From IMG/VR virus record IMGVR_UViG_3300024239_000015, positions 62,001 to 126,000 of that record: 64,000 nt of DNA; one strand, given 5' to 3'. Position 1 is the stretch's first letter, and each line of letters begins with the position of its first letter. The translations under genes and the position numbers were made by a program. Below, piece by piece: positions 3,087 to 34,800 of the stretch. The notes below the pieces were generated by a model. That model was given only the letters and a program-made list of their open reading frames with translations. It had not been told where the DNA came from and did no database searches.

Positions 3087-3117
3087 AAAAAAGAGGGAGT
3101 TTCGACTCCCTCTTTTT
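3087..3117. terminator. Bidirectional intrinsic terminator
   Basis: AAAAAAGAGGGAGT-TTCG-ACTCCCTCTTTTT. Confidence 0.85.
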
Positions 3118-3172: not shown

Positions 3173-3496
3173 TCAGCCGAACGATTTTCGTGCGTCCGTT
3201 TCGTTATCAAACCAACGACACCCCCAGTACGAACAATCAACTGGGTTGAAATAGTTGATAAACCCGTCTTCGTGTTTCTTACTTACGGCATAGGCCAGAC
3301 ACGCTTCACGGAAGGTACGTCCTTCAGAAGTCCCCACCAGACTCGCTCCAGCGGACTGCCCGGTACATGCGTACCCTTCTACCCAAATCTCGTAGGTTTT
3401 TGATGGCATGTTATCGGACAATGTACTACGTTCCAATTCCAATGCATCTTCAACACCGCGATGTCTTTCTTTTAGTCGTCCCACTTTCTGGTTCAT
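3173..3496 (-). CDS. Conserved phage hypothetical protein
   Basis: IWVEGYACTG...YWGCRWFDNETDARKSFG resembles a small family seen in many tailed phages; GGAG RBS. Confidence 0.6.
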   Translation of the reverse strand: MNQKVGRLKERHRGVEDALELERSTLSDNMPSKTYEIWVEGYACTGQSAGASLVGTSEGRTFREACLAYAVSKKHEDGFINYFNPVDCSYWGCRWFDNETDARKSFG

Positions 3497-3525: not shown

Positions 3526-4992
3526 TTACTCCGGTGAGAAACCCACACGAACCTTTTTCATTCTTCCTTCGAAGATTTCTGCTAAAGTACCAGCAGTCGC
3601 ACAGGACTCTGGTAACTCGTAATGGTTCACAACGCGTGTTGCCTCATGTGAGGTCAGCTCGCGGGTTTCTACCGCTTTGTAACAACGACCAGGACGTATC
3701 AGTGCTTGGTCTATTTTGTTACGCGTGGATAAGTTTGTGGTGATCACCAATTTGATCTTTTTAGAAGCGATACCCTGTAACTCGTTTAACAACATCGACA
3801 TCAGCTCATTACCGTCCTGCCCTTCTCTAGGCGCAAGTAACGTATCTACGTCTTCGAAGATCACCAACGTGTTATCTGGAATCGACATAAAGTACGCGGG
3901 AAACATTGCGTTACGTAAATGGTGCGTACCACCGATTTGTAACAGACGGTAACCTTTGCTGTCACCCGCGCGACAGATCTGTGCTAATAACGAACTCTTC
4001 CCAGTCCCGTAAGGACCTAACAGTAAGGTCATGTTTGCGTTAGACTGGAAGAAGCCCTCTATGTAAGCATCCACTCCACCGTCTAAGTAAGGGTAGTTGA
4101 CGTCGTGTGGTATGTTCTTTCCAGGAACAATCTCACGCGTGGTTACAGTACCCTTACCGTTACAGTCGATGTTCGTTAACAACGACAGCTTCACGGGCTG
4201 TTCAACTTCCCACTTCTTAAACCACTCGAGCTCTTGTAAGATCTTCGGCTGGTCCTTGCGTTCGAAGTAAGCCGCATACACAAACTTCGTCCCGTTAACG
4301 TTCACACGGATCGCAGACGTTAAGATTTCGTTGTCGCCATGAATGCGTTTGCGGTATGCGTTAAAACCAGGCAAGTCTTTATCGAACGAGTACTCGATCA
4401 CGTACTCTAAACTTTCGAGGTATTGTGCTATTTCCTCTACCGTCTCTAGGGTAAATTCTTGGCAGGCAAAACGTCTTTCCAAAAACCCCGTAGAAATACC
4501 ATTCGCCAAATGGTGTTCTACGATTCGAAGTACTCCAGTGATAGCACGTAGTGACATGATATCGGAGAACGTAGTGATTTGTAAGCGAGTGTGTGTCATT
4601 TCTGAAAAATCTCCGTTGAGATACGCTGTGAAAAAGAACCAAGGGTTGGTGAAACCCACATCGGCCATGTGTGATGTAGCCGCCGGTCTACTTTTGTCAA
4701 CTGTTTTAAGGTGCAGTGCAGTCGAGATACCAACGACAGGCGTTCCGGGTATAACTAAGAACGCTTTGCAGGTTAGGTCGATCCCTCCCAGTCTATTAAA
4801 ATCGAAATGATCAAAGTTGACGGGGACGGAGGGTAGACTTGAGACAGACCGCCTCAACGGAAGATTTTCTTTCGCGATCGGTTCTAATAAATCGGTCCAC
4901 TCGGCGTCGTAGCTTGCGAATTCCCAATTCGGCATCATGGGTCTTTCGATAGTTCTTCGTAGGGATTTCCACCCTGAAGGGTCCATATGCAT
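3526..4992 (-). CDS. AAA+ ATPase (classical clade), paralogue 1
   Basis: Walker A GPYGTGKS, Walker B VIFEDVD, sensor-1 TTN, SRH DQALIRPGR. Confidence 0.85.
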   Translation of the reverse strand: MHMDPSGWKSLRRTIERPMMPNWEFASYDAEWTDLLEPIAKENLPLRRSVSSLPSVPVNFDHFDFNRLGGIDLTCKAFLVIPGTPVVGISTALHLKTVDKSRPAATSHMADVGFTNPWFFFTAYLNGDFSEMTHTRLQITTFSDIMSLRAITGVLRIVEHHLANGISTGFLERRFACQEFTLETVEEIAQYLESLEYVIEYSFDKDLPGFNAYRKRIHGDNEILTSAIRVNVNGTKFVYAAYFERKDQPKILQELEWFKKWEVEQPVKLSLLTNIDCNGKGTVTTREIVPGKNIPHDVNYPYLDGGVDAYIEGFFQSNANMTLLLGPYGTGKSSLLAQICRAGDSKGYRLLQIGGTHHLRNAMFPAYFMSIPDNTLVIFEDVDTLLAPREGQDGNELMSMLLNELQGIASKKIKLVITTNLSTRNKIDQALIRPGRCYKAVETRELTSHEATRVVNHYELPESCATAGTLAEIFEGRMKKVRVGFSPE

Positions 4993-5005
4993 CTCCTCTA
5001 AATCG

Positions 5006-5029
5006 ACAGGGGAGGAAACCCTCCCCTGT
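5006..5029. terminator. Intergenic hairpin between the ATPase paralogues
   Basis: ACAGGGGAGG-AAAC-CCTCCCCTGT; no U-tract. Confidence 0.5.
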
Positions 5030-5037
5030 AGTTCTAA

Positions 5038-6414
5038 CTACACACGAAAGCCAGGGCCCGCGGTCAGCTCTGCAGCGTTTGGACCATCTAAAACATCCGC
5101 TAAACTTACGTTATCCCGAATGCGGTCTTCCGGTAAGTTTAACTCCGCAACAATCACCGCAGCTTGATCGCGCGTTAGGTGTTTGAATTGTTTCAATGCG
5201 TAACAACGACCCGGACGGAACAATGCCGGCTCTATCATTTTCGTGTTTTCTAAGTTCGTGGTGATTACAAACTTAACGTCGCGTACAGTCACTCCAGACA
5301 ACTCATTCAGTAACGTTGAGATGCTGGTGTTCCCTTCTTCACGTTTACCGATTAAGGTGTCAGCTTCTTCGATTAAGACTAGTGAGTTTTCTGGTATCTT
5401 CGTCAGATATGCATCAAACGCTGGGTGCGTCAACACTTTCTCACCGCAGAATTGGTAGATTTTCCGTTCGCCCGCACTACGACATAAGTGCCGCAACAAC
5501 GTAGACTTGCCTGTACCTGGAGGGCCGATCAGCAACAACAAGTTGTTTTTGTCGTCTAAGAACGATTCGGTAACGCCATCCAAACCGCCTTCCAGATATG
5601 GATAGAACATATCTTTCGGCGGATTGAAGTTTTCGTCCACGACACGAATTGTGATATCCGCTTCACCGTTTGGTGTAAACCCTACTACGTAATTTATCGT
5701 TGTTGGAGGAGTCGATTTGTATTGTTCCAAAAATGCGATGATCTTCGACTCTTTTACGTCGTGTCCGTCTGCAACGTAGCTCGCGTATCTGAGTTTTTCA
5801 GAACTCACCGAAATGTGAATTGCGGCAACCATGAACTTGTGACCTAGGTCGAGTTCTGTGATATAGAATGCATTGATTGCAAAGGAGTCGGCACCGGAAT
5901 CACGGCTTTCTACCAAGTAACCTAACTCTTTTAAGAACACCACCGTGGATTTAAGTGCTCCGCGGTTGTATCCTTTTTGTAGGTAATCAAAGTCGGTAAA
6001 CGCTGTGGATACGTTATTCGCGAAGTGATGTTCGTTGATACGTAACACACCCGTCATGGCACGTAAAGCGATAAGTTCTTCGGCGGTACGTACGAAGGCT
6101 AAGTTTTGAATAGTTTGCATGAGCTCTCCTAAGAGGTTTAAGTAATGAAATTTAAGTATATCCTCGTAGTCCGAGTTGGTGGGATCTACGAGAGTCGGTC
6201 GTGTTAAAATGATTTGGATGTCGTTACTGTGGCTGAACCTACACGCGGTATAGAGTGTTTCTACGTCGTATCGAGAGTATAACTCGATGTCTTCGCAAAA
6301 CACCGTTCCTGTGACCGCTTGGAGTAACCACCGCCACTGTTTGAAATCTCCCAGAGGGATGGTACGGTCGTAAACGATCTCCGGTATCAGCGGGTCGGCG
6401 TCCTCAGCGATCAT
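5038..6414 (-). CDS. AAA+ ATPase (classical clade), paralogue 2
   Basis: Walker A GPPGTGKS, Walker B VLIEEAD, TTN, EPALFRPGR; likely start MIAEDAD at 6414 (ATGA overlap). Confidence 0.85.
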   Translation of the reverse strand: MIAEDADPLIPEIVYDRTIPLGDFKQWRWLLQAVTGTVFCEDIELYSRYDVETLYTACRFSHSNDIQIILTRPTLVDPTNSDYEDILKFHYLNLLGELMQTIQNLAFVRTAEELIALRAMTGVLRINEHHFANNVSTAFTDFDYLQKGYNRGALKSTVVFLKELGYLVESRDSGADSFAINAFYITELDLGHKFMVAAIHISVSSEKLRYASYVADGHDVKESKIIAFLEQYKSTPPTTINYVVGFTPNGEADITIRVVDENFNPPKDMFYPYLEGGLDGVTESFLDDKNNLLLLIGPPGTGKSTLLRHLCRSAGERKIYQFCGEKVLTHPAFDAYLTKIPENSLVLIEEADTLIGKREEGNTSISTLLNELSGVTVRDVKFVITTNLENTKMIEPALFRPGRCYALKQFKHLTRDQAAVIVAELNLPEDRIRDNVSLADVLDGPNAAELTAGPGFRV

Positions 6415-6842
6415 AAATCCCCCAGAATAATCGCTAGTTCCAAAGAGCGTTTGGTTGACTTCTGAGTGTTCGTAACGTATTCGAAGACCTGCTTGTCGTG
6501 GGGGGTGTTGAACGACTGTCTGTGGTTGTACCCCAAGTACAACGACGTACGATCTAGCACCGCAGGCGAGCAATACAACATCGTTGATCTGCGGTCTGGT
6601 ATGTACGCCAGAGGCTGTAGAAACGGAATCGTATCGGCAAACATTCCTGAGTAAGAGGGGTGCGCAACCGAAAACGGATGGTCTCCTACCTCACTATTCG
6701 CGTGTAGGTCTACAGAGAACATAGGAGCCACACAGAACAAGTCGGGTTGGACTGGGAGTTGTACTCCTTCTTTCAGTTGGGCAATCGTGCACACAGGACG
6801 TTCGTGCTCAAAGACCCACGCATGCACTGTTTTTATTTTCAT
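6411..6842 (-). CDS. Hypothetical protein, paralogue of 6839..7288
   Basis: Start MKIKTV at 6842 (GGAGGGAG RBS, ATGA overlap); VQPDLFCVAPMFSVD motif. Confidence 0.65.
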   Translation of the reverse strand: MKIKTVHAWVFEHERPVCTIAQLKEGVQLPVQPDLFCVAPMFSVDLHANSEVGDHPFSVAHPSYSGMFADTIPFLQPLAYIPDRRSTMLYCSPAVLDRTSLYLGYNHRQSFNTPHDKQVFEYVTNTQKSTKRSLELAIILGDL

Positions 6843-7288
6843 AACTCCCTCCAAAGGGCTAATGCATTTAAAAGCCCAATGAGCGCCACTGTGGTGTCGA
6901 ATTCCAACCCATGCGGGTGGTCTACCACCAACGGGATAAACCCACCAGCTCTCGTCCACTCCCCACGGAGTTGTATGTACAAGTCTATGGGTTTAGGAGG
7001 GTGTACGTACGCAGTAGCACCAGACAACACTCCGTCTCTCCACGCGATGTGTTGTTGGAATAAAGACCTCCCTACTAGCATTGCAGGTTGGGTGTAGAAA
7101 ATACATTCGCTGTACTCGTCATACGCGGTGTTGTGTAGGTTAGGGTCTACGCACAGTAGCGGTGCGACAGAAAAGAGTGTGGGTTGTACCACACTCTGTC
7201 TGTTTGCTAAGTGTAAGACCACGTGATGGAACGGCTGTTCTTCCCCTCGCCGGTACTCGATGTGAGGCATAGCAAACATACAAGTCAC
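6839..7288 (-). CDS. Hypothetical protein, paralogue of 6411..6842
   Basis: GGAGG RBS; VQPTLFSVAPLLCVD motif. Confidence 0.65.
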   Translation of the reverse strand: MTCMFAMPHIEYRRGEEQPFHHVVLHLANRQSVVQPTLFSVAPLLCVDPNLHNTAYDEYSECIFYTQPAMLVGRSLFQQHIAWRDGVLSGATAYVHPPKPIDLYIQLRGEWTRAGGFIPLVVDHPHGLEFDTTVALIGLLNALALWREL

Positions 7289-7300
7289 TTTCTGGCCTCC

Positions 7301-8452
7301 TTACATTTTGTTCAATTGCAATAGCATCCGTTTTTGCTCTTCTGTTAAGTTTGACATCAGCTGGGAAATACTCAGGATCTGTCTAAACTCTGCTTCTGTG
7401 CTGCTTTGTTTAGTGACGTTGATGGAGTGACTACACACCACCGTATTGTCACGAGTATACCCTTTATTGGAGTCTAACCGTTCAATTGACAAGTAGTTCT
7501 CTGGAATACGACGTAAGCGAATGTCCTCTTCTGAAAACTGTGTCACTAAAGGTTGGCGTGTGTAGTAACACACATGACTACGCATCAGTGTGGTAAAGTC
7601 ATCAATCGTTAACGCAAACTCTAACTCACGACGCATCGCGTTACGCGCTTTGTTTAAGTAACGCTGTGCAACCATCATCGAGAACCTGACTTGTTCACTA
7701 CGTTCTTTATTCAACAGGTGTTGGAATTCGAGCTCATCCCGTAACTCATCGGAAAGCACCGTCGTGTCTTCTTCCACCACGTCTTGTTCTTCTACCGCGG
7801 ACGTCTGTTGCTCTTGGGCGATAGAAGGATTCACTTTCACCAACTCTTCTATTTTCTTACTGCCTAGTTTTTCTAACTGTAACGCCAAGCCACTCTTTGG
7901 CGCTTGACCAAACGTAGTTGACTCCCCGTGGAACTTTGTGGTGTCAGCCACTCTGTTTTCCTGCAAAGACGCTTTGTACTCGCTCATGTACCTCGCGATC
8001 AAATGCCATTCTCTGGAAGCCATCCGTTCGATGGGTACTGTATTCCACTTCCACATCACCGTCAAGCGAGTTCCCATTCCAGGCATGTTTTCCTGAGCGT
8101 AGGTTTGTGCTTCCTGGATGTAACTCGGAACCCAATGAATCAGCTGTAAATCAGTCATTGCTTCTTTCAGCTGACGGACGCTGTGGGCTGACATAAAGAA
8201 ATTATCGCTTTGTTTGTCGATAGCGATTTTGATGTGGTCGCGCCCAGCACGGATGAATTGTTCCAAGTCGCGACGTAGAAACGCACCCTCATTCAACGCA
8301 ATGGACGCTTGATGGTAACAGTCTTCTAATTCGACGATGGGTGTGAGTAGCCGCGCGTCTAACGCGCTAGTCATGTATTTCGCAAAGTCTTCTGTAGCAA
8401 ACATTTCGTGACTACGTAGTTCTACCTGAATCTTTTCTGCCAGGGTGGTCAT
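7301..8452 (-). CDS. Protein with C-terminal HNH-like (beta-beta-alpha-Me) nuclease domain
   Basis: CYYTRQPL...LSIERLDSNKGYTRDNTVVCSHSINVTK resembles the phage SIDRIDxxKGY...N nuclease signature. Confidence 0.6.
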   Translation of the reverse strand: MTTLAEKIQVELRSHEMFATEDFAKYMTSALDARLLTPIVELEDCYHQASIALNEGAFLRRDLEQFIRAGRDHIKIAIDKQSDNFFMSAHSVRQLKEAMTDLQLIHWVPSYIQEAQTYAQENMPGMGTRLTVMWKWNTVPIERMASREWHLIARYMSEYKASLQENRVADTTKFHGESTTFGQAPKSGLALQLEKLGSKKIEELVKVNPSIAQEQQTSAVEEQDVVEEDTTVLSDELRDELEFQHLLNKERSEQVRFSMMVAQRYLNKARNAMRRELEFALTIDDFTTLMRSHVCYYTRQPLVTQFSEEDIRLRRIPENYLSIERLDSNKGYTRDNTVVCSHSINVTKQSSTEAEFRQILSISQLMSNLTEEQKRMLLQLNKM

Positions 8453-8782: not shown

Positions 8783-9583
8783 TTAACCGTACGTACTGGT
8801 GAGTGCGCAGTACTCGGCTTCTGAACTTATAGATGGGAACGGCGAGCGTATTAACTCACGAGCGTTCGATTCTTCGTATTTTTGTTCAAAATAAGCAGCG
8901 GACAGGTTTGCTTCTTCAGGGCGTTCTAATTGAGCATTCCACGCTTTGAGTCGTTTGATGTTGTGGTTCGTTACTCCCTTCGTGAGAAACGCAGCATCCA
9001 TACGACGACAGGGGGCGCAGTTCCCACAGCGATGGATAGTCTCTCGTTCTATAGGACACTCACACACCCACGTCGTTTCAAAGACGTTGTCTGGTGAGTC
9101 GCGTAAAATTTGTTCTTTGGACAGATAAGCCAAAGGAACTTCTAGAGGAAACTCCTCACCCCAACTCAGCTGCGACATCGCAGACCAAAGCTGTTTGATT
9201 ATAGGAAGTTTTCCTGTTTCTTCCATCAAATACCCGACTACTAACGCACTATGGCGTTCTGGGTTAAACGCCCGTGCGGCTGCAACTGCCCACGTCTGTG
9301 GTTGATTCCAGTGGGGTATTAGGCGGTCACCTTTCTTACAACAATTCCACCAGTCGAGCTCACACTCGTACTCCCGTACCGACCATGGATAGTCCTCTTT
9401 TTGCCTTATTGAAGCTAAGAACTTTTCTCTCACTTCTAACTCTTTCTTTTTCTTTAAGGGATGTACTGCCGTATGAACATACAAGACGTCAAACGGTTCT
9501 TTGTTTGAAACTAACTGACGCAGTATGTGCGTACTATCCATTCCACCACTGTACAAGACTAACTTTCTTTTCTCTGACATCAA
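8783..9583 (-). CDS. queC: QueC-like PP-loop ATPase (7-cyano-7-deazaguanine synthase family)
   Basis: PP-loop LYSGGMDS; PLAYLSKEQI; TWVC...CGNCAPC zinc site. Confidence 0.75.
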   Translation of the reverse strand: MMSEKRKLVLYSGGMDSTHILRQLVSNKEPFDVLYVHTAVHPLKKKKELEVREKFLASIRQKEDYPWSVREYECELDWWNCCKKGDRLIPHWNQPQTWAVAAARAFNPERHSALVVGYLMEETGKLPIIKQLWSAMSQLSWGEEFPLEVPLAYLSKEQILRDSPDNVFETTWVCECPIERETIHRCGNCAPCRRMDAAFLTKGVTNHNIKRLKAWNAQLERPEEANLSAAYFEQKYEESNARELIRSPFPSISSEAEYCALTSTYG

Positions 9584-25969: not shown

Positions 25970-28900
25970 ATGGAGACTGTGATGGTAAAGAAACTGGATA
26001 ACGTCGATGACTTTGACATTGACGACTTTGGGTTTGACGGAGACATGGATGATCCGTTTCGACCCAAGAGTGACCGAGAGATCGTAGCTGCTTTACCGAA
26101 AGATTTCTTAAGTGGTGTGAAGTCGTCTGTCACCGACCCAAGTTTTATGCGTCAGGTGTTACGCAAAGCGTTACCAAGTGGGTACAGTGACGCACTCGAC
26201 GTGGCAGACGACGTGGCGTACGCCGCCCAAGGGACGTACGATCACTTAGACCGTGAGCTTCGTCCAGCGGTCAAAGGATTGAAAGGGGCGCTTAAGCGAG
26301 TAAAAGCGTTAGCGACCCCCGTCCTACCCAAAGGGATAAGTGAGAAACTTGATAAATTACTCGAGTCAGAAGAAGAGTATAAAAGGCAGCAAACGGACTT
26401 TCGTGAAGAAGGAATTACGAAAGGGTTAGCGGAAATCTTTGCAGCGCAGACGAAGATTCAAAACGTCAAAGACCAAGACTCAGCAGACCGTGAAACCGTA
26501 CGGGACTTAGCAGAAGAGCAGCGTGCCAATACACAGCGTCAGCTACTCGCCAAAACAGCAGAAGGGATAGGCCACTTAGTTGGGTATCAAAACTCGATTG
26601 GTGTAAAGTTCCAACAAAAGTCATTAGAGCTACAGTACAGAACGTACTACGCCATCAAAGACTTGTTTGAATTAAACAAAGGCGCCGTCCCAGAGAACGT
26701 CAGTTTACTCCGTGGGATTTTAAAGAACACAGGTTTACCAGAAATCCAAAAGATCACCACCTCTGAGCAGATCAAACAAACCTTACAGGAAGGGTTGTTA
26801 GGCAAAGCGTACGAAGGGTTTGACGAGCACCGTCGGAAGTTCTTTGGTCGGTTCTTACAAAACGTCAGTGGGAAGATCAAAGAGTCAGGCAGCGCATTTG
26901 CGGAAGGGTTACGGGGTGGCAGCGATGCGTTAGAGTCGATCACCGATGGCGCTGAGATGCAAAAGGAGATGGGCGGGAGCTCAGCCAGCACTGCTGCTCA
27001 GATGGGCGGTATGTTTGTCGGTAGTATGTTAGGTAATAAAACCGCCAAAGCAATCAAGAAGATCACGTCTAAGATTCCTGGTGCGGATGAGAAACTGGAC
27101 AAGTACGGAGCGAAGTTAAGTTACTTGGTGTCCAACCGCGAAGGGTTGATGGAGAAGTTTGCACGGAACGACGAACAGCTTACGGAACGCGAGGGGATGC
27201 TCGGTAGCTTTGTGAACTGGGTAGGAGATCTGTTTAAAGACAGTATCCCACGGTATGGTTCTTACCAAGCCTTAGCCAAGACGGACACAGCGCAACTGAA
27301 CCAACCTGCAGTGTTTGATAACTTAGTCCGTAGCAGTATCGTCGAAGTTATCCCGACTTACTTAGCGAAGATCCTGCAATCGTTAGAAACATTCCGTACC
27401 GGACAGCCAGTGGATGAATTGCGTTACAATCACCAAACTGCAGAGTTTGTCTCGCGTCGTGACTTAACCGCAAAGATCCGTGAGCGTGCAATTACTGAGA
27501 CACAGTTAGGGACGTTGGATCGCCGTACCAACTCTCTGCTGGATGCTCTAGACCCAGAGAAACAACTGACAGAGAAAGAGCGGAAGAAAGTCCAAGCAGA
27601 ACTCGTGCGTCAAGCGCAGAGTAACAAACTGTTTGATCCAGAGACTTTAAGTGACTCGTGGAGACTGGAAGGCTCTTTAGGGAAAAAGACTGCAGAGAAA
27701 TTTAGTGGGTTGGTGGAGTCTAAGTTCAAACGGACGATCGATGGGAAGATTGATTACGACGACAAAGCCACACGGGATCTGTTAGTCAGTGCAAGTCGTT
27801 TGTACAACGAGTTATTGCAGTCTCTACCTGGGGATTTCAAGAACACTCAGATCTACGCAAACACCGGACTTAGAGACTTAGTGCGTGACACTGGGTTGAT
27901 TAAACGCAACGGAGACGATGAGTCTTACGACTTAAATGCGGTGACTGATCAATTCACTCAGTTTATCTCCGGGTCTCCTCGTGCGGTACCTCCCACTAGC
28001 GCTCCAATTACACCCAGTGTCGCTGCTGTACGTCAAGCACAGCAAGCGCAAACTCAACCGTTCTTTACACGCAACCCAGAGCCTATCTACGGCGCTACTA
28101 CACCCACCCAACCCTACCAGAACGCTTTTAGCGATAACGCTGTACAGCAGATCGTAGACGCGATAGAAGAGTCTTCTACTCGCGACTTACAAGTCTCTCA
28201 AACAGAGTCGTTAAAACAGATCGTGGAGTTGATCCAAGGCTTACCAGAACGCATGACGGTACTGACCGGAAATGTAACGGGTGGAGAGTCTGGTCCACAG
28301 ATGTCGAATCTGGAAAGAAACATCCGTGGTGGTTTGAAAGGTACTGCGAAAGGGTTATGGGGAGCCACTAAAGGGCTGTATAACTTTGGTGCTGGACTTC
28401 GGAACAAACTCTTTAAAGGAGCATGGTTCACTGGAAAATTTGGATGGAATCTCTTAACCAAAAAGGATAAAGAGAAAGACCAGCCGGATGACGTGTACGT
28501 ACCGGGGATGAAAGAGCCGATCTTACAGAAATGGAAGATGGCGCTAGGTTGGTACAAGGATGCCGAGACAGGAGAACCAATCTATTCGTTAAAAGACATC
28601 AAAGGTGTTGTACTCGATCGGTTTGATAAAGTAGTGTTATCTGCCGAAGACGCGAAGAACGCGTTCACGTCCGAAGGGAAGAGTTTACTGGATCGTGCAG
28701 TAAATCTTGCCAGAGGTCTGATTACAGGTCCTGGAGCTACGTTTGTAAAAACGATGTTCAAAAGCGTCACTAAACCTACTGAGTGGTTAAAGAACGGTCT
28801 GAAGTCAGCGTGGGCGTTTTACCACGCACACCAAGACATCTGTGTCAAAGGGGAAGAACCTACCGTGCGTCTTTACGCGAACTTAATGCGTAAAGGGTAC

Positions 28901-31900
28901 TACCACGACCAGCAGACACTGAAAACTATTTACTCCTTTAAAGACATCACAGGACCTGTGGTGGATAACTTTGGGAAAGTGGTGCTTTCCGTAGAGGACT
29001 TCCAAGCGGGCTTAGTCACGACTGACGGTAAACCACTGCGTACACCCGCGGAGCGTTTATACGCCATCGGGAAAAAAGGCGTAGGCTTAGCGGTTTCCGC
29101 TGGTAAGAAAGTATGGGAGCTTACGAAGAAAGCGCACGTCAAAACGTGGGGTTTACTCAAGAAAGGGTTAGGGTGGGTAGGTTCTGGCGTCAAAGGAAAC
29201 ATCGGTGTCTCGTTTGGGAGTCAGTCTGGCGACTCTGAAACGTTAGATCTGCAGTCCAAACAACTGGACGTCTTACTGCGTATCCATGACTTACTGATCC
29301 GTGGGTTTAAGTTTGAAGACGCTCCTTTAGGTGGGTATGGTGCAGCGGGTATCTTCGCAAAAGCCAAAGCCGCAGGAAAGAAAGCAGCAAGTAAACTCTC
29401 TGACGTAGAGATCTCCACCTTAGTCGATGACACCATGGATAAACTCAAGAAAATCGGTGTACCTGATGGGTATATCGAAAAACTGGAGAGTATCAAACAG
29501 GACATCGACTCTGCTGGCGGTTACAAAGAGTACCTGAAGGCTCAAAAGAAAAGCTTCTCTGAGAAACTCAAAGAACGCATTGCTGGAGAGGACAAACGGG
29601 AAAACTCGTGGGTGGACATTATCCGTGACCGTAAAGAAGCAGCGAAAGGGAAAATGACAGGGTGGAAAGATCGTGTCTTAGGAGACAAAGACAATCCATC
29701 GTGGTTAGGGAAGATTCTCTTTGCGATTGCTGGGTTAGGGACGTTGTTCACAACTGCCGTAGGAAAAGTCGTGAGTACACTAACGACGATGTGGGGAGGA
29801 GTGAAAGCGATTCGCGACACTGTACTCGCCACACAAGCTGCAGCTGGAGCAGCAGACTTACTGACTCCTGATGGGTTACCAGAAGGCGCGGACAAAAAAG
29901 GAAAGCTTCGTGCGAAAACGAAGCTAGGTCGTTTAGGTCAAGCGGCGTGGGGTGGGACCAAAGCTTTAGGACGCGGTGCGCTTAGTGTAGCGAAGTGGAC
30001 AGTAGGCATGCCTGCATTACTACTAGCACGGGGAGCACTCGGCTTAGGCGCGTTAGGTTTAGGCGCAGCAGCATCGATCCTAACGTCTCCTGTGGTTCTA
30101 GGCAGCCTTGCTGTTGGAGCTGTAGGGTATGGCGCTTATAAAGGCTATCGTGCGTTACGTGGCGAACTGAAGCCATTAGAGCGCTTACGCGCGGCAGAGT
30201 ACGGACGAGACCCTAACTCCATTGGTGACTTTGAAGACATCCGTGCGTTAGAAGAGAAACTCAGACCTCACTTGATCCTTTCTTCTAAGGGTCCTGCGTC
30301 GTTAGACAAAGAACTTCCATGGAAAGAACTCGTGGATATCTTTGGGATCGACACGAAAGACAAGACAGAAACGATGACGTGGGCCAACTGGTTCCAGTAC
30401 CGTTTTGCTCCTGTGTACTTACGGTGGGTGACGTTAGTACCTCAGTTCCAACCTGGGGTGACGTTAAGTGACCTCGACGGAAAACTCAAAGATTCCTTCA
30501 AGGTTCCTTACGCGGAGAAAGTCACGTGGCGTAAAGACGAAGCAGGGTATCCATACACGGTCGCTGCGGGTCCTTATGGTGAGAGTGACTCAGAGATGGG
30601 CGACTCTGTCGTTAAAGAGGAACTTACAGCACTCACTGCACTCTTTGGAGACGATGCTTTACGTGAGAAAGCCAAAGAGCGTTTAGCTGCTCAAGGCTCT
30701 GGCTCTGGGTCTTTAGGGTTTGTCGCTGGAATGAAAGACGGGATGCCTACAGCAGGCAGTGCGAAACTGGCTGAGTTCAGTGCACCACAACCGGGAAGAC
30801 AGAGTAACCTCAAAACGTACAAAGCGGGAGCTCTGGAGTACGTCACACCATCTACCCTACCGAACTCTGTGAACACCAAATTCACAGACACACTCACGAA
30901 TGAATTCGGACAGCGCAACAACAACATCGATGACTTTGCGGCAGTGCGTCTGAAAACGTACGGGTTGGTGACGTTAGAGGTAGAGAAAGTCAACAGCGTG
31001 TTAGCGCTAGAGTCTGACGTCTTACAGCAAGTGGTGTACAACGCAGCAGGTAGAGCAGAGTTGGTCAAAGACCCCATGCATTACCTGATGCTGTACGCGT
31101 CTCACTTTGGGGTAAACACGGAGAACCCAGACCAACGTACCGAGTGGTTGTACTGGTTCCAGTACCGGTTTACTCCGGTGTTACTGAACTTTATCGCCGC
31201 AGTGAAGCGAATTGACAAAAACGCAGAACCACGTAGTGCGTCTACGAAGTTTAGTAAAGGACGGTTACACGAGATCGCCAAAGCGATTGCGTCCTCTACG
31301 ACTGTGGTGGAGAAGAAACCTACGTCTGTGTGGTCAGTGTACGCTGTAGCGTTCCCAGGTTACGCGATGAACGAACACGCAGCGTCAGTGGATGTCCACT
31401 TAGCAGCACTGAAGAAAGATGCTGAAGAAGTCGTGTATCAAACACCAGGAAGCTTACGTGCGAGTAACCTGAAGGGAGACCGTGAGGTTAAACTCAAGAC
31501 AACCTACACAGCGACCGGTGGGGTTCCTGATGTCTTTAAACCGGGGAATACCGCAGGGTTAGGACAAAGTGGGATCTTCCCAAGCAGTGGGAAGTCAGGT
31601 CAACCGATAGCTCCGTTTATGGCAGGTAGTGGTGCTGGGTATCTGGAGTTACCGAACCCCAAAGGAGACGGTACGCCAGAAGCCTACGCTGCTTTACTCA
31701 AAGCCGCAGCAGAAGCCGCTGGGATTGAACCGGGAATCCTAGAGACGTTTGCAAAGATTGAATCGTCGTTTAGAACCAAGGTGAGAAATCCAGAAAGCTC
31801 TGCAACGGGTTTATTCCAGTTCACTAACCAGACGTGGAAGGAACAGCTGGGGAAGCATGCTGCTACGTACGGGATTCCAAAAGACGCAAGTCCCACAGAC

Positions 31901-32761
31901 CCGAAAGCTTCAGCGCTGCTTGCAGCAGAATACATCAAAGCGAACCGTGCTCAATTAGAGTCGAAGATAGGACGTAAAGCATCTTTGAACGATATCTACT
32001 TAGCGCATCACTTTGGTGTGGGCGGAGCGAGTAAGTTACTCAATAGCTCTCCGATGGAAGATGGTGTAAAAGTTCTACCTGCAGCTGCGGGTGCGAATCC
32101 TTCTGTGTTCTTGGAAGGGAATCGTCATCGTAGTGTGGCTGAGGTACTGGCGTATATCGACAAGAAAGTCAAAGGAAACGTTCCTGCGTTCTTTGACGAC
32201 TCTGCGGTAGGACAACCTACACTCATAGCAACAGCGCAGCAAAGCTTTGCAGCGGATGCACCAGCGACTCCTGCAGAAGTCAAACGGTTGCAAAGCTTGG
32301 GGATCTACGATCAAGCTGCGAAACAACTCGTCACGCCACGCACAGCAGAATTGGTGCAAGTCCAACCCTCTGCAGCCAGTGGCGGGTTTAACGCTGTCCC
32401 TCGTGGAATCGCAGCAGCACCAGCCACTACAGTAGCCGCAGGAGAGCAACTGAGCGCAGTACAACGCATGGCTCAGGAGAAACGGACGCAAGCTGCACAA
32501 ACCCAGCAGCAAGCCAGACACGTCCAACAACTCCAACACACAACCATGGCACAAACGGTAGACTACGCGAAACGGACAACGGAAGCGACCGAGCTTACAG
32601 CGTCCACACTTCAGCGTATAGAAAAACTACTCTCGGTATTCCAACCCAAGGAGCCCGTACAAACCAAACCAGATGAGCCCAGTAGCAACACCAACTTAGC
32701 TCAGCAACGGTTTGCAAGTAAAGCACCACAACCGGTTGTGAAGACCACACGGGACGTTTAG
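25970..32761 (+). CDS. Giant tail protein with lytic transglycosylase domain (phiKZ gp181-like)
   Basis: 2263 aa; SLT motifs AKIESSF, SSATGLFQF..TW, YLAHHFG; divergent from beta' as in phiKZ. Confidence 0.88.
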   Translation: METVMVKKLDNVDDFDIDDFGFDGDMDDPFRPKSDREIVAALPKDFLSGVKSSVTDPSFMRQVLRKALPSGYSDALDVADDVAYAAQGTYDHLDRELRPAVKGLKGALKRVKALATPVLPKGISEKLDKLLESEEEYKRQQTDFREEGITKGLAEIFAAQTKIQNVKDQDSADRETVRDLAEEQRANTQRQLLAKTAEGIGHLVGYQNSIGVKFQQKSLELQYRTYYAIKDLFELNKGAVPENVSLLRGILKNTGLPEIQKITTSEQIKQTLQEGLLGKAYEGFDEHRRKFFGRFLQNVSGKIKESGSAFAEGLRGGSDALESITDGAEMQKEMGGSSASTAAQMGGMFVGSMLGNKTAKAIKKITSKIPGADEKLDKYGAKLSYLVSNREGLMEKFARNDEQLTEREGMLGSFVNWVGDLFKDSIPRYGSYQALAKTDTAQLNQPAVFDNLVRSSIVEVIPTYLAKILQSLETFRTGQPVDELRYNHQTAEFVSRRDLTAKIRERAITETQLGTLDRRTNSLLDALDPEKQLTEKERKKVQAELVRQAQSNKLFDPETLSDSWRLEGSLGKKTAEKFSGLVESKFKRTIDGKIDYDDKATRDLLVSASRLYNELLQSLPGDFKNTQIYANTGLRDLVRDTGLIKRNGDDESYDLNAVTDQFTQFISGSPRAVPPTSAPITPSVAAVRQAQQAQTQPFFTRNPEPIYGATTPTQPYQNAFSDNAVQQIVDAIEESSTRDLQVSQTESLKQIVELIQGLPERMTVLTGNVTGGESGPQMSNLERNIRGGLKGTAKGLWGATKGLYNFGAGLRNKLFKGAWFTGKFGWNLLTKKDKEKDQPDDVYVPGMKEPILQKWKMALGWYKDAETGEPIYSLKDIKGVVLDRFDKVVLSAEDAKNAFTSEGKSLLDRAVNLARGLITGPGATFVKTMFKSVTKPTEWLKNGLKSAWAFYHAHQDICVKGEEPTVRLYANLMRKGYYHDQQTLKTIYSFKDITGPVVDNFGKVVLSVEDFQAGLVTTDGKPLRTPAERLYAIGKKGVGLAVSAGKKVWELTKKAHVKTWGLLKKGLGWVGSGVKGNIGVSFGSQSGDSETLDLQSKQLDVLLRIHDLLIRGFKFEDAPLGGYGAAGIFAKAKAAGKKAASKLSDVEISTLVDDTMDKLKKIGVPDGYIEKLESIKQDIDSAGGYKEYLKAQKKSFSEKLKERIAGEDKRENSWVDIIRDRKEAAKGKMTGWKDRVLGDKDNPSWLGKILFAIAGLGTLFTTAVGKVVSTLTTMWGGVKAIRDTVLATQAAAGAADLLTPDGLPEGADKKGKLRAKTKLGRLGQAAWGGTKALGRGALSVAKWTVGMPALLLARGALGLGALGLGAAASILTSPVVLGSLAVGAVGYGAYKGYRALRGELKPLERLRAAEYGRDPNSIGDFEDIRALEEKLRPHLILSSKGPASLDKELPWKELVDIFGIDTKDKTETMTWANWFQYRFAPVYLRWVTLVPQFQPGVTLSDLDGKLKDSFKVPYAEKVTWRKDEAGYPYTVAAGPYGESDSEMGDSVVKEELTALTALFGDDALREKAKERLAAQGSGSGSLGFVAGMKDGMPTAGSAKLAEFSAPQPGRQSNLKTYKAGALEYVTPSTLPNSVNTKFTDTLTNEFGQRNNNIDDFAAVRLKTYGLVTLEVEKVNSVLALESDVLQQVVYNAAGRAELVKDPMHYLMLYASHFGVNTENPDQRTEWLYWFQYRFTPVLLNFIAAVKRIDKNAEPRSASTKFSKGRLHEIAKAIASSTTVVEKKPTSVWSVYAVAFPGYAMNEHAASVDVHLAALKKDAEEVVYQTPGSLRASNLKGDREVKLKTTYTATGGVPDVFKPGNTAGLGQSGIFPSSGKSGQPIAPFMAGSGAGYLELPNPKGDGTPEAYAALLKAAAEAAGIEPGILETFAKIESSFRTKVRNPESSATGLFQFTNQTWKEQLGKHAATYGIPKDASPTDPKASALLAAEYIKANRAQLESKIGRKASLNDIYLAHHFGVGGASKLLNSSPMEDGVKVLPAAAGANPSVFLEGNRHRSVAEVLAYIDKKVKGNVPAFFDDSAVGQPTLIATAQQSFAADAPATPAEVKRLQSLGIYDQAAKQLVTPRTAELVQVQPSAASGGFNAVPRGIAAAPATTVAAGEQLSAVQRMAQEKRTQAAQTQQQARHVQQLQHTTMAQTVDYAKRTTEATELTASTLQRIEKLLSVFQPKEPVQTKPDEPSSNTNLAQQRFASKAPQPVVKTTRDV

Positions 32762-32762
32762 C

Positions 32763-32784
32763 AGGGAGGGCTTCGGCCCTCCCT
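32763..32784. terminator. Hairpin after the gp181-like gene
   Basis: AGGGAGGGC-TTCG-GCCCTCCCT. Confidence 0.65.
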
Positions 32785-32820
32785 CTATTCTGTGTAATTT
32801 AAACCACAGGGGTTTCCAGC

Positions 32821-34800
32821 ATGGAATTCAAACGCGACGCGAATTGGGTGCGTCAATCTTTTCTTTTGCCTCGTCGGGGGATAGATGCGGTAGACGCAGT
32901 ACGTCGTACGTATTCAAACGGCTATCGGAAGTTCACAGACACGACACTCGGTGGGAACTTTGCGATTAACTCCCCGTATCAATTTACACCTTTTGCTGAC
33001 ATTCCAGAGAAACGAATCCACACGAACCTTTCTTTACCAATGGGCCGGTGGTACTCAGAGGTTATTGACGATAACAGTATTCACGTCCATTTACGGTTTG
33101 GTGTAGCCCAGTACAACAGCTGGACGAGTTTCTTTGGAAACTTCTACTCTCCTGAACTGTCACGCTTGGCGCGTACAGGACGAGGGACTGGGTTGTTCTA
33201 CACGTTAGGTAAACTAGCAGGCTACGTGGTAGCCTTACCTTTTATAGCGCCGATTCTGATTGGTCAGGTCATTAAGTTCTTAGTGAACAAACCCAGTACG
33301 AAGTTTTATTACTTAAAACCCACCATGCCTTTGTACTGGAACGCAGTGACGATGATCACGAACTACATGGCTGCAAATATGGGGTTTATCCAAGGCCAAG
33401 GCTTTGAGGATTACCAGAAAGACTCTATAGGACTTACCGCCCAGGACATCGCTGATCGTAACTTTCTATTACCGGATACGTTCCGCGCGGACGGTGGAAT
33501 CGATATCTACCGGATTGCGACTAAAGCACAACGTTTAGCGGATCAACAAAACAAAGCACTCGCGAAGATGCGCGAAGAAGCGGGGAGCGTACAAGACTTA
33601 CGTGATCGTTTTGTGAAATACCAAAACACAGAACGAACGGACGTTCCTGAAGGAAACCGTCTGGCGGATTATCTGGATAAATACCTTGGAATGTCAAGTA
33701 CCGCACCCGAGGGGGATAAAGTCGTTGAGGTTCCCAACGACGCAGGTAAAGCAACTGAGGGGGTTCCCACCAAAGTCTTCACAGAACCCAGCGAAGATGT
33801 AAGCTCGTATTACGGAGACTTTGATCCAACCGGACAGAAAGGAAAAGAAGACCCAGGGCTTGTAGACTTCTTGATCGCAGAAGCGCGGGATGGTGCTCAG
33901 TTTATCACCTTCCGGGTTGCAGACCCTGGTGAAGTCGGTGAGAGTTTCTCCAGTACGGTGAAAGACTCCGATATCTCCGGTACGATCAACAGTATTTCTC
34001 AAGGTGCACGTAACTCACGCTTTACGTTTGCGAACGGTAACTTAGACGATGGCATTATCGCCACTACCGTCAAAGGGATTGTGGGAGCAGTTACTGACGT
34101 CGTGGCTGGCTTGGCAGACTCGTTAAGTATTTCCGGGTTAGCGTCATTGGCCGGTAATGCCATGGTAGACATTCCTAAACACTGGGATCAATCTACAGCA
34201 AACTTACCTAAAGCAACGTACACCATCGAGCTACGTACACCGTATGGAAACGACCTTTCACGATACCAAGACTTGTTAGTACCGTTAGCGTTCTTACTAG
34301 CAGGAGCACTACCGTTATCCGCAGGTCCAAGTTCGTTCACTTCTCCTTTCTTGTGTGAGCTGTTCTGTAAAGGCAGACATCAATTCAGATTAGGAATGAT
34401 TGACTCATTGGACATCCGTCGGGGGACGGGCAACTTAGGGTGGACACAAGACTCTAAACCGTTAGGGATTGACATTACGGTAAGTTTTGTGGATATGTCA
34501 AGTATCATCCACATGCCACTGACCACGATGTTTAAACCATGGGAGCCGTTCACACCAGGTGGTATACAGCGGATGTTTACTGCGGATGAATCTGCATTCT
34601 CGAACTACATGGCTGTACTGTGTAGCTTGGGCCTATCAGAACAAATCTACGCGTGGTCTGGTCGGTTAAAACGTAACTACTACCGTCAAGTACTGAACTA
34701 CAACAGTTGGTTCAACAAAGCGCACTTTGCGAACTGGGCCTTTGGAACCTTCCCAGGACAACTGATGTCACTCTTTGCTGAGAACACCAACCGTCCGTAA
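32821..34800 (+). CDS. Virion tail/baseplate protein (phiKZ gp182-like)
   Basis: KFTDTTLGGN..IN...QFT...D motif; follows the gp181-like gene. Confidence 0.7.
   Translation: MEFKRDANWVRQSFLLPRRGIDAVDAVRRTYSNGYRKFTDTTLGGNFAINSPYQFTPFADIPEKRIHTNLSLPMGRWYSEVIDDNSIHVHLRFGVAQYNSWTSFFGNFYSPELSRLARTGRGTGLFYTLGKLAGYVVALPFIAPILIGQVIKFLVNKPSTKFYYLKPTMPLYWNAVTMITNYMAANMGFIQGQGFEDYQKDSIGLTAQDIADRNFLLPDTFRADGGIDIYRIATKAQRLADQQNKALAKMREEAGSVQDLRDRFVKYQNTERTDVPEGNRLADYLDKYLGMSSTAPEGDKVVEVPNDAGKATEGVPTKVFTEPSEDVSSYYGDFDPTGQKGKEDPGLVDFLIAEARDGAQFITFRVADPGEVGESFSSTVKDSDISGTINSISQGARNSRFTFANGNLDDGIIATTVKGIVGAVTDVVAGLADSLSISGLASLAGNAMVDIPKHWDQSTANLPKATYTIELRTPYGNDLSRYQDLLVPLAFLLAGALPLSAGPSSFTSPFLCELFCKGRHQFRLGMIDSLDIRRGTGNLGWTQDSKPLGIDITVSFVDMSSIIHMPLTTMFKPWEPFTPGGIQRMFTADESAFSNYMAVLCSLGLSEQIYAWSGRLKRNYYRQVLNYNSWFNKAHFANWAFGTFPGQLMSLFAENTNRP

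What the first reader, a model, noticed from the sequence alone, without database searches (positions are those of the whole stretch)
3526..7288. Duplicated cluster of two small paralogues plus two paralogous AAA+ ATPases
Seen: four consecutive minus-strand genes; the first three are chained by ATGA overlaps (7288>6842>6414). The two ~145-aa proteins share VQPxLFxVAPxxxVD and YxxPAxL. The two ATPases share LRAxTGVLRIxEHHxANxxSTxF and YPYLxGGxD ahead of a classical AAA module (TTN, ALxRPGR arginine finger). Established: classical-clade AAA proteins (FtsH/Cdc48/Bcs1 type) are ring unfoldases that often use adaptors. Inference: an adaptor-plus-unfoldase system, possibly heterohexameric, for remodelling host or phage proteins. 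I do not recognise it as a described system.
Basis: partly seen in the sequence, partly recalled or inferred. Interest (0 to 1): 0.62.

Follow-up and report, generated by a model that had tools for sequence, protein, structure and literature searches.

The report
Phage Bcs1-like ATPase pair with small partners
A nucleus-forming jumbo phage from a subsurface metagenome carries two old duplicate copies of a Bcs1/YjoB-like ring ATPase (the phiKZ gp208 family), the first copy translationally coupled to a fast-changing array of small lineage-only proteins. This is a new variant of a known but uncharacterised phage ATPase family, not a new kind of system.

Summary
Four minus-strand genes lie at 3526-7288, and the first three are chained by ATGA overlaps. 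The two ATPases are clear paralogues (35% identity, E 2e-66). The two small proteins are probable paralogues: only their first ~40 residues are significantly alike, but a relative carries a third copy that links them.

The genome is a 233-kb chimallivirus with chimallin, PhuZ, PicA and phage RNA polymerases. Both ATPases are long forms of the phiKZ gp208 / PHROG 14322 family. Their fold matches Bcs1 and B. subtilis YjoB best, N-domain included. They have the ED-type Walker B, no pore-loop-1 and no membrane anchor.

BCS1-like ATPases in jumbo phages were already reported (Iyer et al. 2021). So "undescribed system" and "threading unfoldase" are only partly right. New here:
- the A1/A2 duplication, retained in a distant relative;
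- a 90-130-residue N-terminal extension;
- a hypervariable, copy-number-variable small-gene cassette (65-69% nucleotide identity between 95-97% flanks) found in no other lineage among 1.84 billion representative proteins.

Whether the small proteins bind the ATPase is untested: the complex prediction gave no verdict and their fold could not be predicted.

The parts
6839..7288 (-). S1: small protein of 149 aa with a GTG start, first member of the small paralogue array.
   Evidence: ORF and translation. A GGAGG lies 7 nt upstream, and the GTG start is conserved in L009. An orthologue in L009/L010/L011 is 71% identical, with dN/dS 0.125, so the gene is coding. No Pfam, PHROG, NCBIfam or PADLOC family matched.
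6411..6842 (-). S2: small protein of 143 aa. Its ATGA overlaps the S1 stop, and its own stop overlaps the A1 start.
   Evidence: The orthologue P0056 is 61% identical, with dN/dS 0.20. It is a paralogue of S3 in L009 (E 1.6e-12) and a probable paralogue of S1 (hhalign E 1.5e-5). The fold could not be predicted (AF2 pLDDT 39.5; ESM Atlas pLDDT 0.31).
5038..6414 (-). A1: Bcs1/YjoB-like AAA ATPase of 458 aa. It is the long form of the phiKZ gp208 family.
   Evidence: PF00004 E 2.6e-17 and PHROG 14322 E 8e-49. phiKZ gp208 hits it at 1.5e-34. AF2 model pLDDT is 79.3, above 90 for residues 135-455. The twelve best Foldseek matches are all Bcs1.
6169..6414 (-). A1 N-terminal extension (residues 1-82). 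It is absent from phiKZ gp208, poorly conserved and not confidently folded.
   Evidence: pLDDT is below 50 for residues 1-75. The alignment shows no counterpart in the 350-400-aa homologues.
5998..6087 (-). Conserved helical motif LRAxTGVLRI.EHH.AN..ST.F (A1 residues about 110-139). It is shared by all long-form A1 and A2 orthologues.
   Evidence: R118, T121, G122, R125, E128, H129, H130 and T137 are invariant in alignment A7. Helices 111-121 and 123-132 appear in the model.
5629..6012 (-). A1 middle alpha/beta domain (residues about 135-262). It is the structural counterpart of the Bcs1-specific domain and the YjoB N-terminal domain.
   Evidence: VIA alignments run through this domain only for YjoB (model 121-450) and Bcs1 8t14_A (model 72-447, 311 aligned, Z 14.0). 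Foldseek Bcs1 alignments span 359-439 columns. No Pfam BCS1_N hit by sequence.
5041..5628 (-). A1 AAA module: Walker A GPPGTGKS, Walker B LIEEAD, sensor-1 TTN, RPGR arginine fingers, a short lid and a C-terminal GF tail.
   Evidence: The best per-domain profile score in the PDB is to the Bcs1 AAA domain (about 70 bits, against 47 for Cdc48 D1).
5006..5029 (-). 10-bp G+C-rich hairpin in the 45-nt A1-A2 spacer. It is a possible attenuator or RNA-stability element.
   Evidence: Folding energy -25.1 kcal/mol, z-score -3.3. The stem is conserved in L009 but the whole hairpin is reverse-complemented, so the loop is flipped.
3526..4992 (-). A2: second Bcs1/YjoB-like AAA ATPase, 488 aa (486 aa from the ATG at 4986). 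Walker A is GPYGTGKS and Walker B is IFEDVD.
   Evidence: Its own orthologue exists in L005 (344 bits, against 222 bits to the A1 type). The A2 clade has 100/100 support in the tree.
3088..3117 (.). Palindromic terminator-like hairpin flanked by A5 and T5 runs. It is the likely 3' end of the transcription unit, after the 107-aa gene at 3173-3496.
   Evidence: Terminator scan: 13 pairs, 4-nt loop. The 107-aa ORF matches PHROG 26055, function unknown.

Best explanation
The locus is a lineage-specific elaboration of the jumbo-phage Bcs1/YjoB-like AAA+ chaperone family, whose phiKZ member is gp208.

Shown:
- A1 and A2 are two anciently duplicated, catalytically intact, soluble members of this family.
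- Each has a Bcs1/YjoB-type N-domain stacked on a pore-loop-less AAA module, plus an extra 90-130-residue N-terminal extension.
- A1 is translationally coupled to an array of small paralogous proteins: S1 and S2 here, and S1-S2-S3 in a close relative.
- These small proteins have a conserved N-terminal head (..VQPxLFCVAP..) and a fast-diverging body.

Inferred:
- A1 and A2 form ring oligomers, homo- or heteromeric, with an internal chamber. They handle folded or partly folded proteins in the way Bcs1 and YjoB do, not by threading.
- The S proteins are the ring's dedicated small partners. They would dock through their conserved head on the ATPase N-terminal face.
- Their variable bodies are then either the cargo or the element that selects the target.
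- The function is accessory (host takeover, counter-defence or assembly help), not core.
For: Phage identity: hits for chimallin, PhuZ, PicA and the phage RNA polymerase subunits.

Family:
- PHROG 14322 and phiKZ gp208.
- 118 phage records hold a homologue, one of them annotated as a BCS1-domain protein.

Fold:
- The twelve best Foldseek hits are all Bcs1, followed by YjoB.
- Only Bcs1 and YjoB align through the N-domain.

Hallmarks:
- ED-type Walker B, as in Bcs1 and YjoB (PMC9565160).
- Deletion at the pore-loop-1 position (PMC7994207).
- No segment reaches a Kyte-Doolittle score of 1.6, so there is no evident membrane anchor.

Duplication: it is old and both copies were retained.

Small proteins:
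- They are real genes under purifying selection.
- The ATGA chain is conserved, including the S3 junctions.
- In L005 and L006, whose A1 is about 50% identical, a 154-155-aa ORF overlaps or precedes the A1 orthologue. It carries the only copy of the motif in those loci.

Background on relatives:
- phiKZ gp208 sediments in high-molecular-weight fractions (PMC10914614).
- Its knock-down does not reduce plaques (PMC12571901).
- YjoB binds small proteins under 20 kDa, including one encoded nearby. Whether these are substrates or adaptors is still open.
Against: - No result here shows S-A binding. The complex prediction gave no verdict and the S fold is unpredictable.
- The S family is detectable only in this narrow lineage.
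- The link to the L005/L006 upstream ORFs is a motif plus position, not a significant alignment (hhalign E 0.03 and 0.33).
- Most family members, including phiKZ gp208, L014 and several complete jumbo genomes, have neither a small overlapping upstream gene nor a second copy. The ATPase clearly works without S proteins elsewhere.
- Oligomeric state, ATPase activity and cellular location are all inferred.
Confidence: 0.5

Rival explanations
1. The small genes are unrelated accessory genes, for example host-takeover or anti-defence proteins. They sit in a recombination hot spot upstream of the ATPases. The ATPases act on their own, as single-copy gp208 does in phiKZ.
For: - The S cassette is a mosaic divergence island: 65-69% nucleotide identity and saturated dS, between flanks at 95-97%.
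- Copy number varies, with S3 present only in L009.
- The family occurs nowhere else.
- Most homologous ATPases lack such neighbours.
- Overlapping starts and stops are common in dense phage operons.
Against: - The ATGA chain runs into A1 specifically, and it is preserved across S-cassette alleles, including the new S3/A1 junction.
- Positionally equivalent motif-bearing ORFs accompany A1 orthologues at about 50% identity.
- Only the long-form ATPases, which have the extra N-terminal extension, carry such neighbours.
Confidence: 0.27
2. The ATPases act in phage DNA metabolism, remodelling or loading nucleoprotein complexes. They are not general protein chaperones. The S proteins would be DNA-side specificity factors.
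For: - In six IMG/VR loci the homologous ATPase is ATGA-coupled to an SNF2-type DNA helicase (PHROG 62).
- dCTP deaminase lies upstream in L014 and HNH endonuclease upstream in L035.
- In phiKZ a DprA-like gene is the upstream neighbour, and a DEAD-box helicase and dCTP deaminase are close by.
- An HNH-like gene precedes S1 in the window.
Against: - The fold and motifs are those of protein-handling Bcs1/YjoB, not of clamp loaders or helicase loaders.
- The neighbourhoods differ between lineages and no single partner is shared.
Confidence: 0.13
3. This is the proposal of Iyer et al. 2021: a phage BCS1 that translocates folded proteins during membrane-proximal virion assembly or head packaging. 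The S proteins would be the cargo.
For: - The proposal is published for this family (PMC7824862).
- Bcs1 moves a folded client protein.
Against: - There is no membrane anchor.
- The locus is not among structural genes.
- phiKZ gp208 knock-down leaves plaque formation intact.
Confidence: 0.08

Closest known systems
Pseudomonas phage phiKZ gp208 (AAA family ATPase; PHROG 14322)
   Same: It is a homologue of both A1 and A2 (phmmer 1.5e-34 and 4e-26). It shares the middle domain, the ED-type Walker B, the TTN and RPGR motifs and the C-terminal GF tail. It is also from a nucleus-forming jumbo phage.
   Different: gp208 has 366 aa and is single copy. It lacks the 90-130-residue N-terminal extension and has only a degenerate version of the RAxTGVLR..EHH motif. 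Its upstream neighbour is a DprA-like gene, with no overlap and no S-like protein. Its function is unknown: it sediments in the high-molecular-weight fraction and is dispensable for plaques.
Mitochondrial Bcs1 / BCS1L (folded Rieske-protein translocase)
   Same: It is the best structural match over both domains (Foldseek E 2e-13 to 7e-11; VIA 311 residues, Z 14.0). It gives the best per-domain sequence score in the PDB. Walker B is of the ED type, and there is no pore-loop-1 or sensor-II region.
   Different: The phage proteins have no N-terminal transmembrane helix and no Pfam BCS1_N match by sequence. Identity is only 15-19%. Heptameric state and membrane translocation were not tested. The phage proteins also carry an extra N-terminal extension and the conserved helical motif.
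Bacillus subtilis YjoB (soluble Bcs1-like hexameric chaperone, PDB 7W42)
   Same: It is the top VIA match (Z 15.1, 273 residues, model 121-450). It is soluble, with a Bcs1-like N-domain and ED Walker B. It binds small proteins under 20 kDa, one of them encoded nearby, whose role as substrate or adaptor is still open.
   Different: YjoB is restricted to Bacillales and is a stress-regulon protein. Identity is 13%. It has no tandem paralogue and no translationally coupled small-gene array.
BCS1 orthologues of jumbo phages (Iyer, Anantharaman, Krishnan, Burroughs, Aravind 2021, PMC7824862)
   Same: This is the same family at the comparative-genomics level. It is reported in all three major jumbo-phage groups, consistent with the 118 phage records found here.
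   Different: In the passages read, that survey does not describe tandem A1/A2 paralogues, the long N-terminal form or a coupled small-protein array. The role it proposes, membrane-proximal virion assembly, has no specific support at this locus.

Membership tests
Classical-clade AAA (PF00004) | Pfam AAA match above the gathering score, with Walker A, Walker B, sensor-1 and arginine fingers. | tested here: met
   PF00004 scores 63.9 bits for A1 and 43.1 bits for A2, against a cut-off of 21.2. G297, G300-K303, E349, R400, G402 and R403 are invariant in 53 homologues. The AAA module aligns to proteasomal, p97 and FtsH ATPases at Z 14-15.
Classical-clade AAA (threading unfoldases such as FtsH, Cdc48 D2, Rpt) | Aromatic-hydrophobic-Gly pore-loop-1 between Walker A and Walker B. 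| tested here: not met
   The family profile has a 5-residue deletion opposite the Cdc48 pore-loop segments (MSKMAG in D1, SMWYG in D2). A1 and A2 have no aromatic-hydrophobic-Gly in that stretch.
Bcs1 family | Bcs1-specific alpha/beta domain directly N-terminal to the AAA domain. | tested here: met
   This is met by structure only. All twelve best Foldseek matches are full-length Bcs1, with 359-439 aligned columns. The VIA alignment covers model residues 72-447 against chain residues 6-402. By sequence there is no BCS1_N hit. The domain was not folded and searched on its own.
Bcs1 family | Walker B with ED in place of DE. | tested here: met
   A2 has IFEDVD and the family consensus is VIEDAD. 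A1 of the window has the variant LIEEAD. The hallmark is stated in PMC9565160.
Bcs1 family | N-terminal transmembrane anchor. | tested here: not met
   The maximum Kyte-Doolittle score over 19 residues is 0.98 for A1. For A2 it is 1.58, in a segment that contains Pro and Gly. Orthologues score 1.2-1.4.
Bcs1 family | Homo-heptameric ring that translocates a folded client across a membrane. | not testable with these tools
   Only a monomer was modelled.
YjoB-like soluble Bcs1 relatives | Soluble protein with a Bcs1-like N-domain plus an ED-type AAA domain. | tested here: met
   7w42_B is the best VIA match (Z 15.1, model 121-450). There is no transmembrane segment. ED Walker B is present. Orthology is not implied: identity is 13% and YjoB is restricted to Bacillales.
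phiKZ gp208 / PHROG 14322 family | Significant full-domain sequence match to the family profile and to gp208 itself. | tested here: met
   PHROG 14322 gives E 8.4e-49 for A1 and 1.4e-46 for A2. gp208 against the genome ORFs gives 1.5e-34 and 4.1e-26, and these are its only hits. In the tree the long forms are a sub-clade of this family.
S family (S1/S2/S3, defined here) | Protein of about 145 aa with an N-terminal E.P...VQP.LF[CS][VI]A head, encoded immediately upstream of an A1-type ATPase. | tested here: met
   The test is met for S1, S2, their L009 orthologues and S3. For the L005 and L006 154-155-aa ORFs only the motif and position are met, and the alignments are not significant.

The most novel reading that the evidence does not exclude
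In a nucleus-forming phage, A1 and A2 form a heteromeric Bcs1-like translocase for folded proteins. The S proteins are exchangeable licensing adaptors or cargo. The machine would move or mature folded proteins at a phage-built barrier, such as the chimallin shell or the early injection vesicle. The S cassette would diversify in an arms race. One distant homologue is encoded directly upstream of the chimallin gene, but nothing else links the family to the shell.
Probability: 0.07. Interest if true: 0.85.

Novelty: new variant of a known kind. Interest (0 to 1): 0.4.

Why it matters
Bcs1-like ATPases are widespread in jumbo phages, but none has an assigned substrate or partner. Even phiKZ gp208 is known only as a dispensable protein found in high-molecular-weight fractions. 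This lineage offers a natural handle on the problem: candidate small partners encoded in the same translationally coupled unit, in two or more allelic versions, plus two retained ATPase paralogues. If the S proteins bind A1, they would give the first client or adaptor for the phage branch of the Bcs1/YjoB family. They would also offer a way to ask what these rings do during infection by nucleus-forming phages. If they do not bind, the locus is an ordinary case of a conserved accessory ATPase next to a recombination hot spot.

Tried and rejected
Searches that found nothing for the small proteins:
- Pfam, PHROGs, NCBIfam and PADLOC gave no hit for S1, S2 or S3.
- tblastn against 50,697 phage records gave nothing.
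- The word-index protein search found only one close orthologue for each protein.
- The exhaustive profile search of 1.84 billion representatives found only the family itself. It also returned three long multi-stretch proteins, which I take as spurious and did not examine.
- ESM Atlas feature and structure look-alikes were at chance level.

Predictions that failed or gave no verdict:
- AF2 of S2 with a 5-row alignment reached pLDDT 39.5, so no fold search was attempted on it.
- Complex prediction on A1+S2 gave no verdict (score 0.00, partner fold uncertain). This is not evidence either way.

Other dead ends:
- A two-sequence profile of the L005/L006 155-aa ORFs found neither S1 nor S2 in the genome, and hhalign between these sets was not significant.
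- Megablast of the locus against phage records found no match.
- IMG/VR scans with single proteins returned only the window's own contig.
- Public sequencing runs that hold the locus are four DNA runs from one subsurface-metagenome study, with no RNA.

Ideas rejected:
- A defence-system ATPase: only P-loop-level PADLOC hits.
- A clamp or helicase loader: weak P-loop-only matches.
- A membrane-anchored Bcs1: no transmembrane segment.

Full report
**What is in the sequence**

Four genes lie head to tail on the minus strand.

| Gene | Coordinates | Size |
|---|---|---|
| S1 | 7288..6839 (GTG start) | 149 aa |
| S2 | 6842..6411 | 143 aa |
| A1 | 6414..5038 | 458 aa |
| A2 | 4992..3526 | 488 aa |

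- For A2, the ATG at 4986 is better placed behind the GAGGAG.
- S1/S2 and S2/A1 overlap by ATGA.
- A1 and A2 are separated by 45 nt that holds a stable 10-bp hairpin at 5006-5029 (-25 kcal/mol, z -3.3).
- A 107-aa gene (3496..3173, PHROG 26055, unknown function) follows A2. After it comes a palindromic terminator-like hairpin at 3088-3117.
- Upstream of S1, 12 nt away, is a 383-aa protein with an HNH-endonuclease-like C-terminus.

**The genome**

The window is bases 62001-126000 of a single 233,377-bp virus contig. phiKZ chimallin (gp54), PhuZ (gp39), PicA (gp69), gp59, gp67, gp68, gp70, the RNA polymerase subunits (gp55, gp71, gp73, gp74, gp80), the gp50 DNA polymerase and the gp75 and gp203 helicases all find ORFs in it. 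It is therefore a member of the nucleus-forming phiKZ-like jumbo phages (Chimalliviridae). The only public runs that hold the locus are DNA runs of one subsurface-metagenome study. No close relative is among 50,697 deposited phage genomes.

**The ATPases**

- A1 and A2 are 35% identical over 360 residues (E 2e-66).
- Both pass Pfam AAA and match PHROG 14322 at E 1e-46 to 1e-48.
- Both are homologues of phiKZ gp208, which has no other hit in the genome.
- Walker A, sensor-1 (TTN) and the RPGR arginine fingers are intact in both.
- Walker B is of the ED type: IFEDVD in A2, consensus VIEDAD, and LIEEAD in A1.
- The family profile has a 5-residue deletion where Cdc48 has its pore-loop-1.
- The lid after the arginine fingers is short and ends in a conserved GF tail.

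The AF2 model of A1 has pLDDT 79, and above 90 for residues 135-455. It shows an alpha/beta domain (residues about 135-262) in front of the AAA module.
- The twelve best Foldseek matches in the PDB are all full-length Bcs1 (E 2e-13 to 7e-11, 359-439 columns). B. subtilis YjoB follows.
- On re-alignment, the AAA module matches every classical AAA protein at Z 14-15. Only YjoB (model 121-450, Z 15.1) and Bcs1 (model 72-447, 311 residues, Z 14.0) align through the N-domain.
- By profile, the best single-domain score in the PDB is to the Bcs1 AAA domain (about 70 bits, against 47 for Cdc48 D1).
- ED Walker B is described as a peculiarity of Bcs1 and YjoB (PMC9565160). Absence of the substrate-contacting pore loop and of sensor II is a peculiarity of Bcs1 (PMC7994207).
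- No segment of A1, A2 or their orthologues reaches the usual hydropathy threshold for a membrane helix. The proteins therefore resemble soluble YjoB more than membrane-anchored Bcs1.

**What is already known about this family**

- Iyer et al. 2021 reported BCS1 orthologues in representatives of all three major jumbo-phage groups. They proposed a role in membrane-proximal assembly (PMC7824862).
- A PA5oct-like homologue is annotated as an "AAA+ ATPase and BCS1 domain protein".
- phiKZ gp208 sediments in high-molecular-weight fractions (PMC10914614).
- Its antisense knock-down had no effect in the first and a weak effect in the second of that table's two read-outs, which I take to be plaque formation and ChmA level in that order (PMC12571901).
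- No substrate or partner is known.

**What is particular here**

1. Long form. A1 and A2 have 90-130 extra N-terminal residues that are poorly conserved and not confidently folded. These are followed by a strongly conserved helical motif, LRAxTGVLRI.EHH.AN, which is only vestigial in gp208.
2. Old duplication.
   - A 206-kb relative (L005) has separate orthologues of A1 (51% identity) and A2. Reciprocal scores are 430/217 and 344/222 bits.
   - In a maximum-likelihood tree, the A1 clade (94/99) and the A2 clade (100/100) sit inside a long-form clade (86/84). This clade is distinct from gp208 and the other short forms.
   - phiKZ, FLC9 and three complete and one 71%-complete IMG/VR phage genomes (177-257 kb) each have a single copy. 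None of 22 further IMG/VR loci (L014-L036 except L019) has a second copy within 4 kb.
3. The small-gene array, described next.

**The small proteins**

- S1 and S2 match no family library, and their fold could not be predicted.
- They are real genes. Orthologues in three independent short contigs (L009-L011) are 71% and 61% identical, with dN/dS 0.13 and 0.20.
- In L009, a third gene, S3 (144 aa), sits exactly between S2 and A1. It is 27% identical to S2 over 125 residues (E 1.6e-12) and carries VQPQLFCIAP.
- With S3 in the profile, S1 is the best non-self hit in the genome (E 0.002). Profile-profile comparison gives E 1.5e-5 over the first ~40 residues. A collinear full-length alignment shows scattered invariant positions.
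- I conclude that S1, S2 and S3 are paralogues with a conserved head and a diverged body.
- All junctions (S1/S2, S2/S3, S3/A1 and S2/A1) are ATGA overlaps.

Nucleotide identity between the window and L009 changes sharply along the locus:

| Segment | Identity |
|---|---|
| Upstream gene | 95% |
| S1 | 69% |
| S2 | 65% |
| A1 | 82% (mosaic, 74-96%) |
| Spacer and A2 5' end | 97% |

dS is saturated in S1 and S2 but is 0.05 in A2. The cassette is therefore a mosaic hot spot with copy-number change, not just a region of relaxed constraint.

An exhaustive profile search of 1.84 billion representative proteins found no member outside these three clusters.

In more distant relatives, a small ORF again abuts the A1 orthologue:
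- 155 aa, overlapping, in L005;
- 154 aa followed by an overlapping 108 aa in L006;
- 97 aa in L007.

The 155- and 154-aa ORFs carry the only occurrence in their loci of the head motif (VVPVLLSIA and IVPCLLSIT). That motif occurs only in S1 and S2 in the whole 233-kb genome. Their alignments to S1 and S2 are not significant, and the motif was loosened after seeing them. This is suggestive, not proof.

**How it most likely works**

Shown:
- family membership, fold and intact catalytic motifs;
- the absence of a threading loop and of a membrane anchor;
- the old duplication;
- the conserved translational coupling of a variable small-gene array to A1.

Inferred:
- ring assembly with a chamber, as in Bcs1 and YjoB;
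- S proteins docking by their conserved head on the N-terminal face or extension of A1;
- their variable bodies serving as cargo or as target selectors;
- an accessory role in infection.

The YjoB precedent fits this reading. Its strongest interactors include small proteins under 20 kDa, one encoded nearby, and their role as substrate or adaptor is still open. The one complex prediction available (A1+S2) gave no verdict.

**Rivals**

1. The S genes may be independent accessory genes in a recombination hot spot.
2. The family may work in DNA metabolism. In six IMG/VR loci the ATPase is ATGA-coupled to an SNF2-type helicase. Elsewhere it follows a PHROG 1250 P-loop protein, a dCTP deaminase or an HNH endonuclease. 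In phiKZ it follows a DprA-like gene.
3. It may have the virion-assembly role proposed in PMC7824862.

Neighbourhoods differ between lineages, so none of these readings is compelling.

**Verdict**

The ATPases belong to a family already recognised in jumbo phages. The tandem long-form paralogues with a coupled, hypervariable small-protein array are a new variant of it. Interest is moderate: the locus gives testable partner candidates for an uncharacterised but widespread phage ATPase, but no evidence yet shows that the partners bind.

Noticed in passing
window 5006-5029 and L009:3505-3528: The A1-A2 intergenic hairpin has an identical 10-bp stem in the relative, but the whole 24-nt element is reverse-complemented, so the loop reads GTTT here and AAAC there. 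This is a small inversion between the inverted-repeat arms, within DNA that is otherwise 96-97% identical.
   Followed up: partly
window 8783-9583 (minus strand): A 266-aa protein matches PHROG 1550, QueC-like queuosine biosynthesis (E 1e-23), and part of Pfam QueC (E 3e-9). It may be a 7-deazaguanine-pathway or other PP-loop enzyme in a chimallivirus. Neighbouring genes were not checked for QueD, QueE, FolE or DpdA.
   Followed up: no
window 7301-8452 (minus strand): A 383-aa protein whose C-terminal 130 residues match HNH endonuclease PHROGs. They also match PHROGs labelled 'decoy of host sigma70' and 'Srd anti-sigma factor' (E 1e-12 to 2e-20). It ends 12 nt before S1 and is 95% identical in L009.
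   Followed up: no
L026, L029, L031-L034 (IMG/VR contigs of 8-65 kb): In a different phage group, the short-form homologue (363-367 aa) overlaps by ATGA with an upstream SNF2-type DNA helicase of 513-528 aa (PHROG 62, E 1e-80). In L017, L018 and L022 it directly follows a 287-319-aa P-loop protein of PHROG 1250; L019 has an unscanned 294-aa ORF in the same position.
   Followed up: partly
contig carrying P0021 (Logan SRR23617270, no DNA served): A 472-aa homologue of the ATPase is encoded directly upstream (77-nt gap) of a chimallin gene (PF25677). This is a single observation.
   Followed up: no
C-termini of A1 (window 5041-5052), A2 (3529-3546) and all family members aligned: The extreme C-terminus is a conserved hydrophobic-Gly-Phe tail (..VGF.., G455 and F456 invariant in the long forms) with 0-7 residues after it. 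It recalls the docking tails of other ring ATPases. Its function is unknown.
   Followed up: no
window about 26000-34000: GC skew and AT skew switch sign (from about -0.05 to +0.14) over roughly 8 kb and then switch back. This is consistent with a block of plus-strand genes inside an otherwise minus-strand region.
   Followed up: no
L005:16234-16836 and L006:8689-9306: Relatives of this phage encode proteins with Pfam Acb2_Tad1_hairpin hits (anti-CBASS/anti-Thoris sponge family) a few kb downstream of their A1 orthologues. L006 also has a BubE-family hit.
   Followed up: no
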